The notes under the pieces: model-generated
What the model saw: only the letters and a program-made list of their open reading frames with translations
Databases searched by the model: none
What the model was told of the DNA's origin: nothing
Shown: one piece after another, positions 1,085 to 10,200 of the stretch
How the letters are laid out: each line of letters starts with the position of its first letter
Position numbering within the stretch: the stretch's first letter is position 1
Made by a program: the position numbers and the translations under genes
Source: Trichoplax adhaerens
Taxonomy: Eukaryota > Animalia > Placozoa
Direction of reading: 5' to 3'
DNA length: 10,200 nucleotides
Assembly: GCF_000150275.1 (NCBI RefSeq)
Contig: NW_002061111.1
Coordinates: 1 to 10,200 of the forward strand

Positions 1085-2460
1085 TCTTTGTTGAGCATTA
1101 CTTTAGGCAAAATGTCAACTAGCACACAGACTACTAAAAGGCTGAGCAATTAATCGATTGGTCATTATTATACACTTCTATTGCAACACAATGCTGCACT
1201 GGCATGTAATTGACGCCTGACAATTTAATATGCTTGTTACGCTGTGATAACATAAATTCCGTCAGAAAATTTATCTAGGAATGTATTTACATACCGTCAT
1301 TTATGATGTTTTTCATGCTTTTAATAGATAACTGCATAGCTTAATAATATTATCTATAAACAGATAATTAATATTTATTTCCATTCACTATAAAATGACT
1401 GACTTTTTAACAAAGTTTGGATTCAGTTATGTCTAAGACAGACGAGTATTGTGTCACTGTCTTTCCCGACGAAAGGAGATCGTCAGTATTTAGAGTCGTA
1501 CTGTAGGTTAATGTCAAGAAAACTAACTAGTCAGTAGACTTATAGTATACTTTCTATAATAGTTTAGCATTTTTCTCGTTATAAATGTCGACTTGTAACA
1601 ATGCTATTATGATATTTGCTCGTAGAGGAGTAATATGGCTTAGCATAAGAATCAGTAATATGCAGCACTAGTTAAAGTAACTGTTACATCTGTAGTTGCA
1701 AAATGTGTACGATTACGGTATTCAGACGAGAGTTGAGGAGTCTATGAGTTAATGCATATTACTCGTCACAGGGCAGTTCTTAACAGTAACGACGAATTAT
1801 TAAGAGACAATTATGCTTATTCAAAAGGCGTAAATTTATCTTTAATTGTTTGAGATGTAACGATGTTATATACTTAGTGAGAAGTAGCAATGATAATTAA
1901 TAGACAATAAAAAGTAAAAGTATATAAGGTTCGCAAAGTATAACGAACATGAGTTGTACTATTAATGATTATCATTCAAAAAAGTTTGATTTAAGATAAT
2001 TTTATGTCCATTGCGACTCTAGTAGCTAATTTTTGTAAATTATAATTACTTGTTGGAACGTATTTATTTCACGTTAAAGTATCTATATAGCTAAATATAT
2101 AACACAAACATAACTTAAAGTACAGTATAATAAATTCTTTTAAGAACTAAATTTTAACGAGCTTAGCAAAGAATATAATACTCTTAAAATTGTATTGAAT
2201 CCACGAGAGCATTAAAATGTTTCTATAGTTGCAATTACCCGTGCATTCTAATATACCATTGGTCTGCACAAATGTCAAACTTATAAATTGAAAATCTACC
2301 GTAATTTGTGGACTATAAATAAAGTCTTTCATTGTCTTTATAATGGATATAGTTAGATTACGATTACGACATATAATATAGGATATGATGCTAATCCTTA
2401 TTTCATCTTGTCAAAACGACATATCGCTATTGTTTCTCACAAGTTTTCGTATCGATTACT
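1085..2460 (-). pseudogene. Diverged, degenerate paralog of the CARD-TIR linker region (6242-7396)
   Basis: Colinear homologous blocks: 1085-1290 with 6242-6445; 1795-1900 with 6460-6625; 2050-2242 with 6640-6835; 2407-2460 with 7341-7396. The copy of the 54-nt exon has a 1-nt insertion, CGA>TGA and donor GT>AT. Confidence 0.7.
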
Positions 2461-2727
2461 ATAGAAAAGTTTTTAAGTAGTTCATTATTGAAAAGTTGAT
2501 CGCGTTATATTCAGTAATGTGGTATAGGATTTTGTGATGGTATATATTCTAATATTTAATATTTTTTGTATGAGCTATACTATAATGAACAAATTTTGTA
2601 TCTCAAATACGTAGATAAGTAGAAAAATGTTAGCAATTGCCTATTCTAAAGAAAGATCGATAGATGGCTTTTTTGGATTAAAATTTAAAAACCGTAGCAA
2701 AACACTATCCTTTTAGAAGCTTCGACT

Positions 2728-3426
2728 ATGAAGCATACCCTATTTACGCTAGCGACGGAAATTTATTTTATAGATTAACTTTTAGTTTTTCTTAAAGTTT
2801 ACTTACTAGAAAAAGTGTTTAAGGTAGAAAAAACTGATCTATCGTTATACCATAGTTTGCTTGTTAAATTTATAGCGTTCTGTACAGAAATCGTAGGTAA
2901 ATTGTGTCTACGCTTTGTACGATATTTACTTTCAGAAATGATGCACAGTAGAATTCTGGGTATAACGGTATAACCCAAAACTGAGTTCGATGTTAAGAAA
3001 TGTTTAATTTTGATAGCGCTAGTTCTATTCTACTTATCTATAGTAACTAGTCCTACAATGAGACTAGACTCGATTTTTTAAGAGTTATACCTTCATATTA
3101 ACAGACTAATTGAGTAATTTAATCGATTTAGAATGGGAAGAACAGCAGTTGCTGCTCCATTTCCTTACCCGGTAATGAAGCATACTCTGTTTACGCTAAC
3201 GACCGAAATCTATCTTATAGATTAACTTATAGTTTTTCTTGAAGTTTAATTGCCCAAAAAAATGTTAAAAAATAAAAAATGTAATAAAAATTGATCTACT
3301 GTTATATCATAGCTCGTTTGTTAAATTTATAGCGTTCTGTACAGAAATCGTAGGTAAATTGTGTCTGAGCTTTTGTATGATGTGTACTTTCATAAATGAT
3401 GCACAGTAGAATTCCCAAGTAATAAC
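2728..3426. repeat. Direct repeat pair of about 240 bp (2728-2966 and 3175-3426)
   Basis: Both start ATGAAGCATAC and end near GCACAGTAGAATTC; an exact 49-nt match at 2861-2909 and 3318-3366. Confidence 0.95.
3013..3169. repeat. Copy of 8439-8595 (5' part of the CARD gene's first intron, including the donor)
   Basis: Ungapped 157-nt alignment with 16 mismatches by hand count (about 90% identity). Confidence 0.95.
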
Positions 3427-4221
3427 TTCTAAAATATTACTTAATTAGTATTTAACTAGATTAACAACTCATTTGAGGTACTATTAACAGTTTAGGATAT
3501 CTTCCTGAAGAAGTTTTCAGTTACATAGTGTCAAGCATCGGCTATCTTGGCTTTACCATGATAGCTATGAGGTATTACGAATGATTTAAGAGCAACTAGT
3601 ACGTAATCTACACGTTTCAAATGTGTTATTAGTCTACAGAGTAGTTGGTACCTTTCGTATTTTGAACTATGTTTATACTGATCTTTGGTAAATCAATAAG
3701 TCAGCAATATCAATAAATGACGTCGAAATAGGGTAGTTAAAATAGGAGTGGAGTAAAGATAATTTTCATTATGTTATCATCAAAATTTACTTTAATTAGA
3801 TAGATCTTGGATAAGAAGTAAATAAGAAGTAAGTACAATGCTAAATTGGCAATAATATTACTGATTAGAAATTATAAAAGTCTGTAAAGCATACTTTCTC
3901 AAACGGTAGTATAATAAATCTAATAACGCCCTTCAACCCCAAAAGTAAATAATTAATTATAATTATTAACCTTTCTTCAATAAACAAAGATTTCTACAGT
4001 TACAATTAATATCCTGTAACTGAGATACTAAGAAATTATTTTTGCTGAAATTATCAATAGATTAATGAAATTGAGTAGAGTGATTCATGAAGTGAAAATG
4101 AAAGAATTAGTTTCAGATGTTTATTGTCATATATTCGTTGTTTTGAAAGGCGCGAAGCATAAATTTATCATCACTTTACTATTCTGTTATTTACTGAGAA
4201 AATACATGAGTTATAATTTAC

Positions 4222-4320
4222 CTGGAGTCGTTCCTGTATCCATCTTGTCAACTTCGTCTTTCGCAGGGCTAAGTTGTTGTTGACTCGATTTGGTCTCTGG
4301 CTTAGGTTTGACGATACTTT
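4222..4320 (-). CDS. 99-nt symmetric exon, low-complexity C-terminal tail (SIVKPKPETKSSQQQLSPAKDEVDKMDTGTTP)
   Basis: gaaattttag|AA...CCAG|gtaaat; phase 1-1, higher GC than flanks, open frame. The downstream terminal exon is not resolved. Confidence 0.55.
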
Positions 4321-4472
4321 CTAAAATTTCAAGATATAACATAAATTTATATTCGTCAAATTTATAGCTCGGTGAAAATAAGTACTTTTGCATGACGATA
4401 TTTTATGATCTTTACCACTCATACTGCTACTTAAAGATCATTTAAAGCAAACGCAAGTGATTAGAATATTTC

Positions 4473-4793
4473 TTATACGGATACTAAGAATACACAAATC
4501 ATGTTACAAATGTAATGACCCGTATTTCTTTGTTTAACAGTACCATATAGTTTCTCTAATTTTTTCTTGAATTCATCATCTGTTTGTTTTTGACGAAGAA
4601 TTTTAGTGTAGACCTTAGTACTAATTAAAAAATAGAAATCTCTCTTGCCATCTGAACTTATCAAATCCTTCTTTGGATCAATATCTTTGATGATGACAGG
4701 TTTTATTGTCTTTTGATGCAAATGTGCGTAATTAAATTCCAGGTAACAATTGTATGAATTTGCGTAATCCTTGCTCAAAAACGGCATAAACAT
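4473..4793 (-). CDS. TIR domain, second exon; 3' end uncertain (stop at 4473 or a phase-1 donor after 4544, 4520 or 4508)
   Basis: Phase-0 acceptor attatctttcatag|ATG. MFMPFLSKDYANSYNCYLEFNYAHLHQKTIKPVII continues the TIR fold (S..Y..S..C..E...A....K.I.PV). Intron 4794-5316 is GT-AG. Confidence 0.88.
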   Translation of the reverse strand: MFMPFLSKDYANSYNCYLEFNYAHLHQKTIKPVIIKDIDPKKDLISSDGKRDFYFLISTKVYTKILRQKQTDDEFKKKLEKLYGTVKQRNTGHYICNMICVFLVSV

Positions 4794-5316
4794 CTATGAA
4801 AGATAATATCGAGATAATTAGAGAGCAGAATCTTATAATTACTTTAAGATCATAACTCACTTCTGAATTAAAGTTCTATTTTGAAAATAAGCCACTACAA
4901 CAAAATCTAAAAATGTATTATAACTACGAAATTTATAAATCAACAATTAATCTGTAAATGAAGTGAAAAGTATATCTAAAAATTTTACTATCATAATTAA
5001 CTTTACAGTTACAGAATCAAAAAACAGTCTCTATACAGGAAGATATTAAAATTTCGAATCTTTCATTATGTCCTGTGTCGATTTAATTGTATCTCCTCTA
5101 CATCTTATTGAGAAATATTGCCACAGTCTATTCTTGACGTAAAATTTAAGTTCTATTTATTGTATCTCATTTTCGAATTAACAATGGAAGGTACGAGTAA
5201 TTCGGTTAATATGACAATATACCAGTATTTGCTTAAATTTTGCCTTGCTCAACCTGTTTTTCGTCGCAATAACGGATAAGAGGATATATTTATAAGATTA
5301 AAATGTGCCTTCATAC

Positions 5317-5474
5317 CTCAGACGACATGATAGCTTTCGCTATTACAGGGTGAAGTTCATCTCCCACGTAGATTTTCTCTTCATCTATCCAACAGGAAAT
5401 ATTTTTGCTTTCCAAGAATTCTTTTACATATCGGACATCCGCTTTATCACTCCAGCTATAACTTATAAATACTC
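5317..5474 (-). CDS. TIR domain (TIR_2-like), first exon
   Basis: VFISYSWSDKADVRYVKEFLESKNISCWIDEEKIYVGDELHPVIAKAIMSSE has TIR box 1 FISYS, W.D, GD.L...I..AI..S. Phase-1 acceptor gaattag|GA; phase-0 donor GAG|gtatga. An in-frame ATG at 5496 is an alternative start. Confidence 0.9.
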
Positions 5475-5579
5475 CTAATTCATAGATAGCAACCATTTTA
5501 AATATAAATCTCTTGATAAGAAGGAGCAAAGGCATTTTAATTGGAGCCTTTATCTACCGTTATATTTTAAACAACTTAC

Positions 5580-5615
5580 GCTGATTTTTCTTTTGGCTAT
5601 CAGTGGTATCCATTC
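5580..5615 (-). CDS. 36-nt symmetric exon preceding TIR (MDTTDSQKKNQ); its ATG could start a TIR-only protein
   Basis: tactgttaacag|GAATGGAT...CAGC|gtaagt with a consensus donor; phase-1 join gives KKNQR-VFISYSW. Confidence 0.65.
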
Positions 5616-5669
5616 CTGTTAACAGTAAACGTGTTTCATAAGAAAAATATCAAGTTAATTGTTACAAAC

Positions 5670-5698
5670 GTTTCAGATGATATTGTACATTTTTCAGT
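5670..5698 (-). CDS. Candidate 29-nt micro-exon (phase 2 to 1; GLKNVQYHLK)
   Basis: gttcctag|A...AAAC|gtttgt; restores frame after the 16-nt exon (16+29=45). Splice sites are weak. Confidence 0.3.
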
Positions 5699-6241
5699 CT
5701 AGGAACCTATCAACTATAACATTTGTTATATGCATCATGAAAAAAGATATGGCGCCTGGATTAGACTTTGACTTAGAAGCATAGTCTGCAGTTCCGTATG
5801 CAAACAGAATAGAAATCAATTATTTATTACGCACCAAAATTACTGCAATGTCTACTATAGAATAGTCTTGTAGTGAGGCTGTTAGTTCAGTTATAAAATC
5901 TAATTCTAGTCATAAAACTTCGTTCTCATACTAGATTGTGTAAGTATTAAGAGTTATTGTTTGCAATCTTTACGTTGTAAACATGTTAGGGAACGTACTT
6001 AAGTAGTTATTTTATTCTGTTATTATTATTTTAAGTCTTTGTTTCAAAAATCTGCTGTTGTAACAAATTTTTCTATGTCTGTCAGAGCCTATTGTACTAT
6101 TACTTAGTATTTCGATTGTTAGAGTATCAGTAATAAAACTAAACTATCTTTTTATTCCTTGTAGTCTAAATGCAGCTAGTAGAACAGGTTTTATTACATT
6201 TGCATTTATGGAATACGAATCCAAGACGATCTTTACATTAC

Positions 6242-6257
6242 CCATTATTGAGCCTTA
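6242..6257 (-). CDS. Candidate 16-nt micro-exon (phase 1 to 2; VRLNN)
   Basis: Long pyrimidine tract ctatttttcatttttgtcttcag|TAAGGCTCAATAATGG|gtaatg. The paralog at 1085-1100 has the same length and AG/GT borders. Confidence 0.45.
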
Positions 6258-6830
6258 CTGAAGACAAAAATGAAAAATAGCATATAGATTACCAAGAAAC
6301 TGAGCAATTAATCAATTGCTTTTCCTCATAAACTTGTGTTACAACGCAGTGACGCTCGTAGATGTAAATTTATGCCTTATAACTTAATATGTTATTATGA
6401 GACTTACTTTTAGAAGAATAACATAAAATGATCTAGGAAACATTTGTAAGCAACACTAATTATTAAAAACAACTAATTAATCGATTATGCTTGCTCAAAA
6501 GGTGTCAATTCAGCTTTGATTATATTATTTGTAGGTGAAATGGTATTGTGTTTGACTTATATAAAAATTTACGTACCGGGAAGATTTGATCTAATATACT
6601 AAGTGAAAAGCTGCATTGATAACAATCACTGTTACAATCACTAGCTGGAATGTATTCATCTCATGTTACAGTATCTGTACAGCTAAATATCTTGCATAAA
6701 CATAACTTTAAGTAAAGTTTGACAAATCTTAATAATAATTAAATTTTAACGATCATAGAAGGATAACTAATATTCTTAAAATTGTGATGAACCCATAATA
6801 GCATTAAAATGTGTCTATAGTTGTAATTAC

Positions 6831-6872
6831 CTGTGTCTTTTTTAATATCTTCAGAGTTTTTCGGTTTTCGAC
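6831..6872 (-). CDS. 42-nt symmetric linker micro-exon (GRKPKNSEDIKKDT)
   Basis: tctgttatttag|GT...ACAG|gtaatt; open in phase 1-1, hydrophilic linker composition. The donor and downstream intron are conserved in the copy at about 2050-2240. Confidence 0.55.
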
Positions 6873-7340
6873 CTAAATAACAGATACAACAGGTAATTTA
6901 GTTACTACGTAGCTACTTACAAAGAGAATATTTATCAGAAAGATGGATTTATAGCGATATCAAATTGATTACAAATTTAGGATGCAATGATTAAGTAGCG
7001 GCTAAGTTTTAAATGATTATAGCAGGCAATATCAAAAATCATATTTCAATGTAATAAACATAAATCAATCACAAAAGCTCTTAGCTTGATAAATTAATTC
7101 GGTTAATGTCAAATTCAATTCAGTATTTATATACATGTAAAAATTACGTATTACCGATTACCTTAAGGGTTAAGTACTAAATTATGAATAATCTAAATAA
7201 TTGTAACTCTTACACAACATGATTATCATAAATTATAGCCTTTTGTCCTAGTTAAACATGTTATAATTATAGTGGAAACTTAGTTCATTGACAACATACT
7301 AGTATAACAGCATAAAAAGTGATACTGATCTTTAATTTAC

Positions 7341-7394
7341 CTTGTCGAAACGACACATCGCTATTTTTTTAACAAGTTTTCATATCGTCTACTA
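7341..7394 (-). CDS. 54-nt symmetric (phase 1-1) exon with in-frame TAA at 7371-7369
   Basis: ttttcaatttacag|TAGTAG...CGACAAG|gtaaat; reads VVDDMKTC*KNSDVSFRQ. A homologous segment is retained at 2407-2458. Confidence 0.6.
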
Positions 7395-7545
7395 CTGTAA
7401 ATTGAAAATCTAATTTCATTATGTACTTGTCGTACTATTCTCTACTCTGATCGTTTTATTGTTATTTCTACTCGAAAGTGGGATAATCGTGTATCACATC
7501 CTTAAGTCTTAATCGTTAGGTCTATTTGTAAACTTTAATGCTTAC

Positions 7546-7655
7546 CACTATTGAAGTTTTCCACTGTTATTTCACAATATGTTAAAGCATTGCAAAACTC
7601 ATCAAAGGCTCTATCGCCACGCTCAGGCAGAATATTCAATAAAGTCCAAACTTTT
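7546..7655 (-). CDS. CARD domain, second coding exon
   Basis: Acceptor ttttattttacag|A is phase-compatible with the previous exon (AA+A = Lys). Reads KVWTLLNILPERGDRAFDEFCNALTYCEITVENFNS, with the hallmark CARD motif LL..L..RG..AF..F..AL. Phase-1 donor G|gtaagc. Confidence 0.9.
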
Positions 7656-7811
7656 CTGTAAAATAAAATTAAATAATTACAATAACTGCTCTCCGATTAC
7701 AAAATTTATTCTTGCAGTAAATAAACAAACTATTAATTTAGCCTGCCATTGCATATTAGATATAATACTGTTTAACAGTTACTGAACATGTACTATATAA
7801 AAATTCCTTAC

Positions 7812-7984
7812 TTAGAAGACGTCGATTCAGATTCGATTGTTTCTTGGTGGTATGATGTTAATATTCTCGCTTCGAGTAAATATTCACATATCGGTGAGAT
7901 TTGATCCCGACATTTTCGAGCAAGCAACATACGACTGGCTCTTAGGATTTCACGATGTTCTTGAGTCATTAATCCTGAGGACAT
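7812..7984 (-). CDS. CARD domain, first coding exon (exon begins at 7998, ATG at 7984)
   Basis: MSSGLMTQEHREILRASRMLLARKCRDQISPICEYLLEARILTSYHQETIESESTSS matches the CARD N-terminal half (M...HR..L...R..L, L....ILT....E.I....T). Acceptor aatattttag|AT, start context CAAAATG, phase-2 donor AA|gtaagg. Too short for the ORF track. Confidence 0.88.
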
Positions 7985-8594
7985 TTTGGGTAGCTTATCT
8001 AAAATATTAAATGAATGTTTAAGTTCGAGAAAAGCTACAGTTTTGATAGAAGCTGTATCTTTTTTTCTTTTGCGCTAATTCTAATTAAAAGCGATTGTAT
8101 TTAAGATAAGCGCTTTATACTGTTGGGTTGGGTAGTAGGGGATGTGTAATTATTTTGGAATAATCTGTGTTAAAAAACTGGTATCTTATTCATTAATGAT
8201 TATTTTGCTGTTACCCGCGCCAATGCTAAAATTTTTCTTACTTATTAAGAGGTAATGGTTAACAAAAATAGCGCAAAATCTATTTGACGTAAACTGATGC
8301 TTCTGATAGATGTTAGAAAGTTTTAAAATTGATAGTAACCTTCGATTACATTATTTTTCCAAGTCAATTAATTAATAAAGCTATAGCAGAGTTTTAATTT
8401 TATTAGCGGAAAAAGGGAGTAACTATAGCTCAATGTTAATAGCGCTGGTTCTAATCTACTTATCTATAGTAACTAGTCCTGCAATGAGACTAGGCTCGAA
8501 TTTTTATAAGTTATACTTTCATATGAACACACTAATTGAGTAATTTAATCGCTTTACAATGCGAAGAACAGCCATTGCTGCTTCATTTCCTTAC

Positions 8595-8691
8595 CTAACT
8601 GATCTACTGTTTGTCGTTTACGAGCGCTTGATAAATTCTTCGATTCACTATCGTCGCTTCGATACCAATTGCAGGTGCCCAGACCAAGGAA
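8595..8691 (-). other. Putative first (5'UTR) exon of the CARD gene; 5' boundary uncertain
   Basis: Strong donor TTAG|gtaagg at 8595/8594. Phase-1 join to the acceptor at 7998 keeps the CARD frame. No ATG in that frame back to TAG at 8694-8692. Confidence 0.45.
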
Positions 8692-8792
8692 CTACTTCAG
8701 AAAAGGCAGTGAACTACTTCCGAAGTAGAACTAGCTAGTATAAACTAGCAATGTAATATTAGTTACTAGTTCCTGGCAGTGAACTACTTCCG
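8689..8792. repeat. Short direct repeats GGCAGTGAACTACTTCCG x2 plus a third GAACTACTTC core
   Basis: Exact 18-mer at 8705-8722 and 8775-8792; core GAACTACTTC also at 8689-8698; palindrome CTACTTC-C-GAAGTAG at 8714-8728. Confidence 0.9.
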
Positions 8793-9095: not shown

Positions 9096-9132
9096 TGCTT
9101 GTGAGTGCGCTGTCATTGCGGGCCTTGGTGGT

Positions 9133-9295
9133 AACATAACTAGGAAAATGTCAATTAACTTCAATATGAATTAATTTTCTAAATTAAAATAAATATAGAT
9201 TTCACAAGCAAAGGCAACATAACTTGGAAAACGTCAATAAACTTCAATATGAATTAATTTTCTAAATTAAAATAATGAATGGTATTTCACAAGCA
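9133..9295. repeat. Tandem duplication, 83-bp period, two copies
   Basis: AACATAACT(A/T)GGAAAA...AACTTCAATATGAATTAATTTTCTAAATTAAAATAA...ATTTCACAAGCA starting at 9133 and 9216. Confidence 0.95.
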
Positions 9296-9621
9296 GGTTT
9301 AAGCACAAGAAACTTTCTCAGTCATCAATTTCTTCATTCTAAGCATCATAGATCGAACTTTAATCCAGTAGAAAATGTTATGACAATGCAGCATGAAGTA
9401 GTAAGCATAAAATCATTCTAAAAATGTAAGGAATGAAATGGTTTGTAAAGCCATAATTTAATTATACTAAATCAAAATATCTAGAGTAGTCCATTCATTC
9501 CACCAGTAAAATTTATGCACATAACATTGTCCGGTCGCCTTTCTAAGTCTATAATTTATCTTTCCAATTCCATTCATACAATCATCACGTAGTGATAATT
9601 TTGGCATCAGCAAAAGTAATT

Positions 9622-9878
9622 TTATTTTAATTCATCGTCTATTAATGTCTCTTTGCAACTTTTCAAAACTGACAGTAATACATCAAATGTCGCTTCTGAA
9701 GCAAATGTAGTATACCATGTTTCCAACAGATGAATACACTTGTCAATTCTGCCATCGCTCGTATCGGCTATGCCATCAACGTCATTAGGCTGTAATTTCA
9801 ATTTTCGACCAAATTCTTTCAACTTCTTTGATTTTATTCTATCAGCTATATACATGAAGGTTTCACGCCTTCTACCCT
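9622..9878 (-). CDS. Terminal coding exon encoding a death domain; upstream exons not identified (probably beyond the right edge)
   Basis: Translation GRRRETFMYIADRIKSKKLKEFGRKLKLQPNDVDGIADTSDGRIDKCIHLLETWYTTFASEATFDVLLSVLKSCKETLIDDELK* fits the death-domain pattern (FGRKL.L..D.I, LL..W, AT...LL..L..C). Phase-1 acceptor tgctctatatag|AG at 9879/9878; TAA at 9624-9622. The track's start at 9894 is a TTG within the likely intron. Confidence 0.8.
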
Positions 9879-10200
9879 CTATATAGAGCATCAAAGCATT
9901 GAAGTAAATCAGTTATTTAGCTGCAATTATCATGGATTCATTTTCATTGCTAAAATTTCTAGCCTAACTTATTAATATCTGTATGTGATCCGAAATACCG
10001 AACATCGTTGGCAATAGTGTAGCCTAGTTTATGTTGTCTATGTTGGTATTGAACTACGGTACTAATACTTGAATGCGACAGGTGTGGTATCTTGATCAGA
10101 ATTCTTCTATGCTACTTATACTATGGCTATGAATTAATCGGGATAAAAACAACTTAATAACTTCGCTACAAATTTGATACTTAGTGAGGATGTAGTATGA

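What the first reader, a model, noticed from the sequence alone, without database searches (positions are those of the whole stretch)
4473..7984. Hidden CARD-linker-TIR fusion gene assembled from micro-exons
Seen: a complete CARD in two exons absent from the ORF track, and a TIR domain 2 kb downstream on the same strand. GT-AG micro-exons between them preserve frame. Splicing 7984-7812, 7655-7546, 6872-6831, 6257-6242, 5698-5670, 5615-5580, 5474-5317, 4793-... gives CARD-GRKPKNSEDIKKDTVRLNNGLKNVQYHLKRMDTTDSQKKNQR-VFISYSW...TIR, about 294 aa if it ends at 4473. The frame also holds without the 16- and 29-nt exons. Established: CARDs polymerise into filaments (ASC, MAVS, RIPK2), TIR activity depends on oligomerisation, and mammalian TIR adaptors use DD-TIR (MyD88) or ARM-SAM-TIR (SARM1) rather than CARD-TIR. 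Inference: a CARD-nucleated TIR adaptor or effector linking a CARD sensor to TIR signalling or NAD+ cleavage. I cannot determine from here whether this family is already described.
Basis: partly seen in the sequence, partly recalled or inferred. Interest (0 to 1): 0.85.

Follow-up and report, generated by a model that had tools for sequence, protein, structure and literature searches.

The report
Annotated Trichoplax CARD-TIR adaptor gene
The window holds a real spliced gene of the placozoan Trichoplax adhaerens that joins a CARD to a TIR domain, but it is already in the public annotation (TRIADDRAFT_62605, 292 aa) and placozoan CARD+TIR proteins were described in 2019 as "MyD88-like" in the sister strain Trichoplax sp. 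H2, so it is ordinary as a discovery and untested as to function.

Summary
The core observation holds. On the minus strand a CARD in two exons is spliced through short linker exons to a TIR_2 domain in two exons.

The details need correcting:
- **Exons.** The coding exons are 7984-7812, 7655-7546, 6872-6831, 5615-5580, 5474-5317, 4793-4544 and 4320-4211. All introns are GT-AG and the CDS is 879 nt.
- **Micro-exons.** The proposed 16-nt and 29-nt micro-exons are not used. RNA contigs from three runs join 6831 directly to 5615.
- **3' end.** The gene does not end at 4473. A donor at 4544 leads to a last exon, 4320-4211.

The gene is not hidden. Its product is, residue for residue, the public protein TRIADDRAFT_62605 / XP_002118576.1 / B3SEA7 (292 aa), recorded on a 10,200-bp contig, which is this window. 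It scores above Pfam's cut-offs for CARD (47.5 bits) and TIR_2 (70.5 bits).

Two more CARD-TIR paralogues exist in Trichoplax. Kamm et al. 2019 (PMC6321704) described two such proteins in Trichoplax sp. H2 as "MyD88-like".

The TIR resembles enzymatic TIRs (Cat1, plant TNLs, AbTir, SARM1/TIR-1) more than MyD88. It keeps the catalytic-position Glu but lacks the Trp four residues before it.

The locus lies in a fast-rearranging cluster of CARD, death-domain and TIR exon modules.

Function is inferred, not shown.

The parts
7812..7984 (-). Coding exon 1: start ATG at 7984, first half of the CARD (residues 1-58), ends in phase 2
   Evidence: Pfam CARD 2-45; P0008 residues 1-58 map here at 100%; joint 7812|7655 in X10, in a contig that carries the window's own letters at 7846-7874; donor GTAAGG
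7546..7655 (-). Coding exon 2: second half of the CARD (residues 59-94), phase 2 to 1
   Evidence: Pfam CARD 48-71; tblastn; joint to 6872 in X9, plus an X9 loose end that reads the start of the linker exon
6831..6872 (-). Coding exon 3: 42-nt linker exon (GRKPKNSEDIKKDT), phase 1-1; near-identical copies occur in paralogous CARD-DD genes
   Evidence: tblastn 100%; joints 6831|5615 in X10, X9, X11; copies in P0002, P0011, P0012, P0013
5580..5615 (-). Coding exon 4: 36-nt linker exon (MDTTDSQKKNQ), phase 1-1
   Evidence: Joints 6831|5615 and 5580|5474 in three runs; tblastn
5317..5474 (-). Coding exon 5: first half of TIR_2 (strand A 'VFISYSW' through the BB-loop region), phase 1 to 0
   Evidence: Pfam TIR_2 1-51, 42.3 bits; a contig with 0 mismatches over 5317-5473 in X10, X11, X9 (table 8)
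4544..4793 (-). Coding exon 6: second half of TIR_2, including C189-Y190-x-E192; ends at an internal donor (G|GTACTG), phase 0 to 1
   Evidence: Pfam TIR_2 54-101; joints 5317|4793 and 4544|4320 in three runs; P0008 diverges from the read-through frame exactly at 4544
4211..4320 (-). Coding exon 7: 35-residue Ser/Pro/Lys-rich tail plus stop codon (TAA, 4213-4211); predicted disordered
   Evidence: tblastn of P0008 residues 258-292; joint 4544|4320; pLDDT below 50 for residues 263-292; AATAAA/ATTAAA signal at 4125
8595..8664 (-). Probable non-coding 5' exon, spliced to alternative acceptors at 7998 or 8080. Assignment to this locus rather than to a 95%-identical paralogue is not certain
   Evidence: Joints 8595|7998 (X10) and 8595|8080 (X11), both GT..AG. 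In the window an in-frame TAG lies at 8692-8694 and there is no ATG before 7984. Contigs that continue upstream of 8664 come from a paralogue on C1398

Best explanation
The window is the whole 10.2-kb scaffold of Trichoplax adhaerens that carries gene TRIADDRAFT_62605. This is a minus-strand gene with seven coding exons (7984 to 4211) and probably one 5' untranslated exon. It encodes a 292-aa protein: an N-terminal CARD (about residues 8-93), a roughly 27-residue disordered linker made of two phase 1-1 mini-exons, a TIR_2 domain (about 120-262) and a disordered tail. It belongs to a small placozoan family of CARD-TIR proteins, called 'MyD88-like' in the literature. Shown here: the exon structure, the two domains, transcription and splicing, and the paralogues. 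Inferred: it works as a death-fold/TIR adaptor-effector. The CARD would dock by homotypic CARD-CARD contacts onto oligomerising CARD proteins of the animal (Apaf-1-like NB-ARC-WD40 proteins, CRADD-like CARD-DD proteins, CARD-caspases). That would bring TIR domains together. The TIRs would then either signal by TIR-TIR scaffolding or cleave NAD+.
For: Identity: cluster look-up names P0008 = TRIADDRAFT_62605 / XP_002118576.1 / B3SEA7 on a 10,200-bp contig. tblastn maps it at 100% onto seven window exons. All six introns are GT-AG and the CDS is 879 nt. The lengths of the other contigs match G000 contigs. Domains: CARD 47.5 bits (cut-off 23.9) and TIR_2 70.5 bits (cut-off 28). The AF2 model has a confident helical bundle and a TIR alpha/beta fold, and Foldseek's top hits are TIR domains. 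Transcription: every coding junction is seen in contigs of RNA runs. A 502-nt contig runs from the linker exon through exon 4 and both TIR exons into the tail with 0-1 mismatches. Family: two further CARD-TIR paralogues each in T. adhaerens and in sp. H2 have the TIR intron at the same position. Kamm 2019 describes two CARD+TIR 'MyD88-like' proteins in Trichoplax sp. H2. Mechanism leads: the CARD profile matches the CED-3, RAIDD and Apaf-1 CARDs. The TIR profile matches Cat1, Roq1, L6/L7, AbTir and TIR-1/SARM1 ahead of TLRs, and the invariant E192 aligns with Roq1 E86.
Against: No single contig spans from a CARD exon to a TIR exon. The chain is closed through the 42-nt linker exon, which is shared with paralogues. 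At 90% likeness many laid contigs come from paralogues, and a 98%-identical copy exists at C1398:122-128 kb. All runs were assembled contigs, most only guessed to be RNA. A TIR-skipping, in-frame joint 6831|4320 also exists. Function is untested. The Trp usually found four residues before the catalytic Glu in TIRs is Asn here, or His in one paralogue. No binding partner was examined.
Confidence: 0.85

Rival explanations
1. Two products rather than one. The CARD exons mostly give a CARD-only protein, either by reading through after exon 2 or by splicing the linker exon straight to the tail exon. The TIR part would be made separately, so the CARD-TIR fusion would be a minor form or an annotation artefact.
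For: The joint 6831|4320 (skips both TIR exons, stays in frame) is seen in three runs at depths comparable to the TIR-containing contig. Contigs read across the exon-2 donor into 7394-7611 at about 94% identity. The near-identical copy on C1398 is annotated as TIR-only (P0007, 183 aa) and the H2 orthologue as TIR with a different N-terminus (P0001).
Against: The TIR-containing contig begins inside the linker exon 6831-6860. In the window that exon lies only downstream of the CARD exons and joins CARD exon 2. The intron holding the alternative ATG at 5535 is spliced out in three runs. No contig starts between 5616 and 6830 with meaningful depth. P0007's model is cut by a stretch of N upstream. 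More distant paralogues encode CARD and TIR in one compact gene. The skipping and read-through contigs may come from paralogues.
Confidence: 0.1
2. The gene is a true MyD88 orthologue whose death domain has diverged to look like a CARD. It would act as the canonical scaffold adaptor between a TIR receptor and an IRAK-like kinase.
For: It has the same overall layout (death-fold domain, linker, TIR). Kamm 2019 proposes these proteins for the MyD88 role. An arthropod MyD88 cluster appears among the ESM Atlas feature neighbours at 0.83, which is below the lead threshold.
Against: Pfam calls CARD, not Death, in all three paralogue lineages. The CARD is 85% identical to the CARDs of neighbouring CRADD-like genes, which carry a separate, distinct DD. 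No MyD88 chain is among the 52 PDB sequences matched at E <= 0.01, while enzymatic TIRs lead. By the paper's account, Trichoplax sp. H2 IRAK-like kinases lack a DD and true TLRs are absent. No RDxxPG-type BB-loop motif is visible in P0008 (the motif is from my own knowledge).
Confidence: 0.05

Closest known systems
Placozoan 'MyD88-like' CARD+TIR proteins of Kamm et al. 2019, probably TrispH2_011522 and TrispH2_008615 (the paper's locus tags were not readable here); T. adhaerens TRIADDRAFT_59582 and 62327
   Same: N-terminal CARD, disordered linker, C-terminal TIR_2, about 270-290 aa. They align over both domains (26-43% identity). They share invariant C-Y-x-E in the TIR and the same intron position inside the TIR.
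   Different: This paralogue's CARD and linker exons are about 85% identical to those of neighbouring CRADD-like CARD-DD genes. It has a longer Ser/Pro/Lys tail. It sits in a rearranging tandem cluster. Its H2 orthologue is annotated without the CARD (P0001).
MyD88 (DD - intermediate domain - TIR)
   Same: A death-fold domain followed by a TIR in one small cytosolic adaptor. The logic is oligomerisation by the death-fold domain plus TIR contacts.
   Different: It has a CARD instead of a DD. By profile search the TIR is nearer to NADase-type TIRs than to MyD88. The presumed partners differ: DD-less IRAK-like kinases and no TLRs in Trichoplax sp. H2.
SARM1 / C. elegans TIR-1 and plant TNL TIR domains (NAD+ hydrolases)
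   Same: TIR_2-type sequence. A Glu sits at the catalytic position: E192 aligns with Roq1 E86. Activity in those proteins depends on induced oligomerisation, which a CARD could supply.
   Different: The oligomerising module is a CARD, not SAM/ARM or NB-ARC. The conserved Trp four residues before the Glu is Asn. No enzymatic evidence.
CRADD/RAIDD (CARD-DD adaptor)
   Same: The CARD matches the RAIDD CARD (3crd, E 7e-7). It is about 85% identical to the CARDs of adjacent genes, and the H2 relatives of those genes are named CRADD by NCBI.
   Different: The second domain is a TIR, not a DD.
Bacterial Death-like (EAD) - TIR effector proteins (Kaur et al. 2021, PMC8195603)
   Same: A death-like adaptor domain is fused to a TIR_2 effector. 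Such clusters are the nearest ESM Atlas feature neighbours (score 0.84, a lead only).
   Different: No detectable sequence homology of the CARD to EAD7/EAD8 was tested or found. The context is eukaryotic and spliced.

Membership tests
Placozoan CARD-TIR ('MyD88-like' sensu Kamm 2019) | N-terminal CARD above Pfam's gathering score | tested here: met
   PF00619 at 47.5 bits against a cut-off of 23.9, residues 12-82 of P0008
Placozoan CARD-TIR ('MyD88-like' sensu Kamm 2019) | C-terminal TIR domain above the gathering score | tested here: met
   PF13676 at 70.5 bits against 28; PF01582 at 27.9 bits against 21.3
Placozoan CARD-TIR ('MyD88-like' sensu Kamm 2019) | Both domains on one transcript | tested here: inconclusive
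   All junctions are seen in RNA-run contigs, but the chain is closed through a 42-nt exon shared with paralogues. No single contig spans CARD to TIR.
Placozoan CARD-TIR ('MyD88-like' sensu Kamm 2019) | Homology to the other family members over both domains | tested here: met
   Alignment A1 has 46 invariant columns across CARD and TIR. The TIR intron position is shared on C1404 and C1376.
MyD88 | N-terminal death domain (PF00531) | tested here: not met
   No Death hit in P0008; CARD instead
MyD88 | TIR specifically related to the MyD88 TIR | tested here: inconclusive
   No MyD88 chain among 52 PDB sequences at E <= 0.01. Foldseek lists the MyD88 TIR (7beq) only at rank 46, behind plant, bacterial, SARM1 and TLR TIRs. 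No phylogeny was made.
NADase-type TIR (SARM1, plant TNL, AbTir, Cat1) | Glu at the catalytic position of helix alpha-C | tested here: met
   E192 is invariant in A1. It aligns with the second E of Roq1 'CLEEL' (E86 by count) and with the E of Cat1 'CWDEL'. That these are the catalytic residues is from my own knowledge.
NADase-type TIR (SARM1, plant TNL, AbTir, Cat1) | Aromatic Trp four residues before the Glu (W-x-x-x-E) | tested here: not met
   N188 in P0008; N or H in the paralogues
NADase-type TIR (SARM1, plant TNL, AbTir, Cat1) | NAD+ cleavage on oligomerisation | not testable with these tools
   Needs a biochemical assay
CARD (death-fold superfamily) | Helical bundle able to make homotypic CARD-CARD assemblies | tested here: inconclusive
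   The AF2 model has helices 8-16, 18-38, 44-51, 56-70 and 72-93 with pLDDT up to 93. The profile matches the CED-3, RAIDD and Apaf-1 CARDs. Assembly was not tested.

The most novel reading that the evidence does not exclude
The placozoan CARD-TIR proteins are not scaffold adaptors. They would be NAD+-consuming death executioners recruited through their CARD onto the expanded Apaf-1-like NB-ARC-WD40 platforms of Trichoplax. That would be an animal counterpart of plant TNL resistosomes and bacterial Death-like-TIR effectors. Cassette splicing of phase 1-1 modules (TIR skipping, 6831|4320) would give a CARD-only decoy that tunes the response.
Probability: 0.15. Interest if true: 0.6.

Novelty: already known. 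Interest (0 to 1): 0.22.

Why it matters
As a discovery it adds little, because the gene model and the domain combination are public. It still matters modestly for early-animal immunity. Placozoans lack TLRs, canonical MyD88 and DD-bearing IRAKs, yet keep several CARD-TIR genes. Their TIR looks more like the NAD+-cleaving kind than like MyD88's. A direct assay would show whether the link between a death-fold domain and an enzymatic TIR, known from bacteria and plants, also operates in a basal animal. The locus also shows domain shuffling by same-phase exon modules.

Tried and rejected
1. **Micro-exons 6257-6242 and 5698-5670.** Rejected. There are no joints at them, the direct joint 6831|5615 is seen in three runs, and they are absent from P0008.

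2. **Read-through C-terminus ending at 4473.** Rejected in favour of donor 4544 and last exon 4320-4211.

3. **A longer DD-CARD-TIR gene.** This would splice the death-domain exon (donor near 9690) to an acceptor at 8691, as in the H2 model P0011.
   - No such joint is present.
   - The DD exon carries its own stop, and contigs run on through a 3' UTR (9193-9879).
   - It matches the C-terminal exon of the CRADD-like TRIADDRAFT_60656 at 94%.
   - I treat it as a separate upstream gene.

4. **Upstream coding extension through exon 8664-8595.** The frame is open into the ATG. However, the window has an in-frame TAG at 8692-8694 and no ATG. The contigs that continue upstream with '...SRFKEQASAD' map to a paralogue on C1398:78-88 kb.

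5. **Independent TIR gene starting at ATG 5535.** That ATG lies in an intron removed in three runs.

6. **Relatives outside Placozoa.**
   - A full HMMER scan with TIR exon 6 gave 6 hits. Four are named Trichoplax proteins, one is an unnamed TIR fragment, and one is an unrelated repeat protein.
   - Word-seeded searches with P0008 and with the family profile gave only Trichoplax proteins plus weak TIR-only hits.
   - The phrase 'CARD-TIR' occurs in no held paper.
   - The amphioxus hybrid-gene paper lists no CARD-TIR.

The joined form was covered by the public protein P0008, which tblastn shows to be identical to the exons.
   - Complex prediction was not used. No specific partner pair was well enough motivated.
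Full report
**What the window is.** The window is the whole contig C1246 (10,200 bp) of a 105.6-Mb assembly in 1,414 contigs with about 30% G+C. Exact cluster look-ups tie its proteins to Trichoplax adhaerens. The public proteins found lie on contigs of 10,200, 1,326,318, 2,399,976, 894,902 and 272,140 bp. These are the lengths of C1246, C1398, C1404, C1392 and C1376 here.

**Check of the observation.**

Exon by exon, Pfam gives the following:

| Stretch (minus strand) | Pfam match | Profile positions |
|---|---|---|
| 7814-7984 | CARD | 2-45 |
| 7547-7654 | CARD | 48-71 |
| 5317-5472 | TIR_2 (42.3 bits) | 1-51 |
| 4476-4793 | TIR_2 | 54-101 |

Each domain continues across its proposed intron, which chance does not produce.

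A HMMER scan of 1.84 billion representatives with the last TIR piece returned six proteins. The cluster look-up then listed P0008 = TRIADDRAFT_62605 / XP_002118576.1 / UniRef100_B3SEA7. It is 292 aa and sits on a 10,200-bp contig.

- tblastn puts P0008 at 100% identity on seven window exons.
- A script confirms the exons 7984-7812, 7655-7546, 6872-6831, 5615-5580, 5474-5317, 4793-4544 and 4320-4211.
- These make 879 nt, that is 292 codons plus a stop, with GT-AG at all six introns.
- The full protein passes Pfam's cut-offs for CARD (47.5 against 23.9 bits) and TIR_2 (70.5 against 28 bits).

The public protein served as the joined form.

**RNA evidence.** I laid contigs of four runs from four studies. 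One is on record as RNA-Seq and three are guessed to be RNA. All joints below are on the minus strand and all are GT..AG.

| Joint | Runs |
|---|---|
| 7812\|7655 | X10, in a contig carrying the window's own letters at the positions where paralogues differ |
| 6872\|~7546 | X9, plus an X9 loose end that reads the start of the linker exon |
| 6831\|5615 | X10, X9, X11 |
| 5580\|5474 | X10, X9, X11 |
| 5317\|4793 | X10, X9, X11 |
| 4544\|4320 | X10, X9, X11 |

One 502-nt contig runs from the linker exon through exon 4 and both TIR exons into the tail, with 0-1 mismatches.

- The two micro-exons (16 nt at 6257-6242 and 29 nt at 5698-5670) are not used.
- The C-terminus is not the read-through to 4473. 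It is a further exon ending at 4211.

The intron that holds the alternative ATG at 5535 is removed. That argues against a TIR-only gene with its own start.

Limits of this evidence:

- No single contig spans CARD to TIR.
- The bridging 42-nt exon is shared with paralogues.
- At 90% likeness many laid contigs are from paralogues. Their loose ends map exactly to C1398:78-88 kb and other copies.

**5' end and neighbours.**

- Joints 8595|7998 and 8595|8080 indicate a 5' exon (about 8664-8595) with two acceptors just upstream of the ATG.
- In the window that exon has an in-frame TAG at 8692-8694 and no ATG, so it is untranslated here.
- The death-domain ORF at 9625-9894 (Pfam Death, 34 bits) is 94% identical to the C-terminal exon of the CRADD-like CARD-DD protein TRIADDRAFT_60656. 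It carries its own stop and a transcribed 3' UTR.
- It is therefore the end of a separate upstream gene whose CARD exons lie beyond the scaffold end.

**The family.**

- T. adhaerens and Trichoplax sp. H2 have two further CARD-TIR lineages: TRIADDRAFT_59582/TrispH2_011522 and TRIADDRAFT_62327/TrispH2_008615. Each has CARD and TIR_2 above threshold.
- They align with P0008 over both domains at 26-43% identity.
- They split the TIR at the same intron position.
- Kamm et al. 2019 report, for Trichoplax sp. [quoted passage not shown] The locus tags sit in a figure that I could not read, so the match to these two lineages is my inference.
- The architecture is thus published, and this gene is annotated.
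- Searches beyond Placozoa found only TIR-only relatives. That is limited evidence for restriction to the phylum.

**Genomic setting.**

- The window is collinear at about 95% with C1398:10-24 kb. There the segment holding exon 4 and the first TIR exon is missing and a DD module is present (model P0002: CARD-DD-half TIR).
- It is collinear at 98% with C1398:122-128 kb. The sequence upstream of that copy reads N, and the model there is a truncated TIR-only protein (P0007).
- The H2 contig NOWV01000460.1 is a further mosaic, with the first TIR exon duplicated and a DD inserted.
- The modules join in phase 1: CARD end, linker exon 1-1, exon 4 1-1, TIR pair 1-1, tail start 1. Cassettes can therefore be swapped or skipped in frame.
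- The in-frame TIR-skipping joint 6831|4320 is an example, from this locus or from a paralogue.
My phase table is independent of it.

**How it probably works (inferred).**

- The AF2 model shows a confident helical bundle (residues 8-93) and a TIR fold (120-262). The linker and tail are disordered.
- The family profile matches the CED-3, RAIDD and Apaf-1 CARDs.
- In the TIR it matches Cat1 (7e-13), Roq1, L6/L7, AbTir and TIR-1/SARM1 ahead of TLR6 and TLR2. No MyD88 chain appears at E <= 0.01. Foldseek agrees in ranking.
- E192, invariant in the family, aligns with Roq1 E86. The usual Trp four residues earlier is Asn.
- I therefore favour a CARD-recruited TIR module. Roughly even odds separate an NAD+-cleaving effector from a TIR scaffold.
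- The CARD partners are most likely among the expanded Apaf-1-like NB-ARC-WD40 proteins and CARD-caspases that Kamm 2019 lists. None of this was tested.

**Verdict.** It is already annotated and its kind is already described. Interest is low to moderate.

Noticed in passing
window 9625-9894 (-), transcribed to about 9193: Terminal death-domain exon of a separate CRADD-like CARD-DD gene. It is 94% identical to the C-terminus of TRIADDRAFT_60656. Its CARD exons lie beyond the scaffold end.
   Followed up: partly
window 6831|4320 joint (-): RNA contigs in three runs join the linker exon straight to the tail exon. This skips both TIR exons and stays in frame, which would give a CARD-only product. 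The locus of origin (this gene or a paralogue) is not resolved, because only 21 nt of the tail exon were in the laid stretch.
   Followed up: partly
window 8705-8722 and 8775-8792, with a 72% third copy at 8683-8700: An exact 18-nt direct repeat lies just upstream of the 5' exon, in the only G+C-rich patch of the window. It contains GGAAGT on the gene's strand and may be a promoter element.
   Followed up: no
window 9130-9192 and 9213-9275: A 63-nt stretch is repeated at 83-nt spacing (94% identity) in the 3' UTR region of the upstream DD gene. RNA contigs break at 9193.
   Followed up: no
window 1901-1975 (-) and 2150-2242 (-): The first is 96% identical to the first 25 residues of the H2 model TrispH2_011687 (DD+TIR_2). 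The second is a degenerate copy of the sequence that follows the linker exon. Remnants or parts of a further module therefore lie downstream of the gene.
   Followed up: no
G000:C1398:112000-121999 (L020) and C1398:122000-128200 (L026): The 98%-identical copy of window 2188-6977 on the 1.3-Mb scaffold is preceded by 10 kb that reads N. This small scaffold may be the allele of that place or the missing sequence. TRIADDRAFT_60667 (TIR-only, 183 aa) may be a model truncated by the gap.
   Followed up: partly
G000:C1398:78000-88000 (L025): A highly expressed paralogue supplies most of the deep contigs laid on the window's 5' exon and linker exon. Its transcripts carry an upstream '...SRFKEQASAD' segment like the CARD-CARD-DD protein TRIADDRAFT_61417.
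   Followed up: partly
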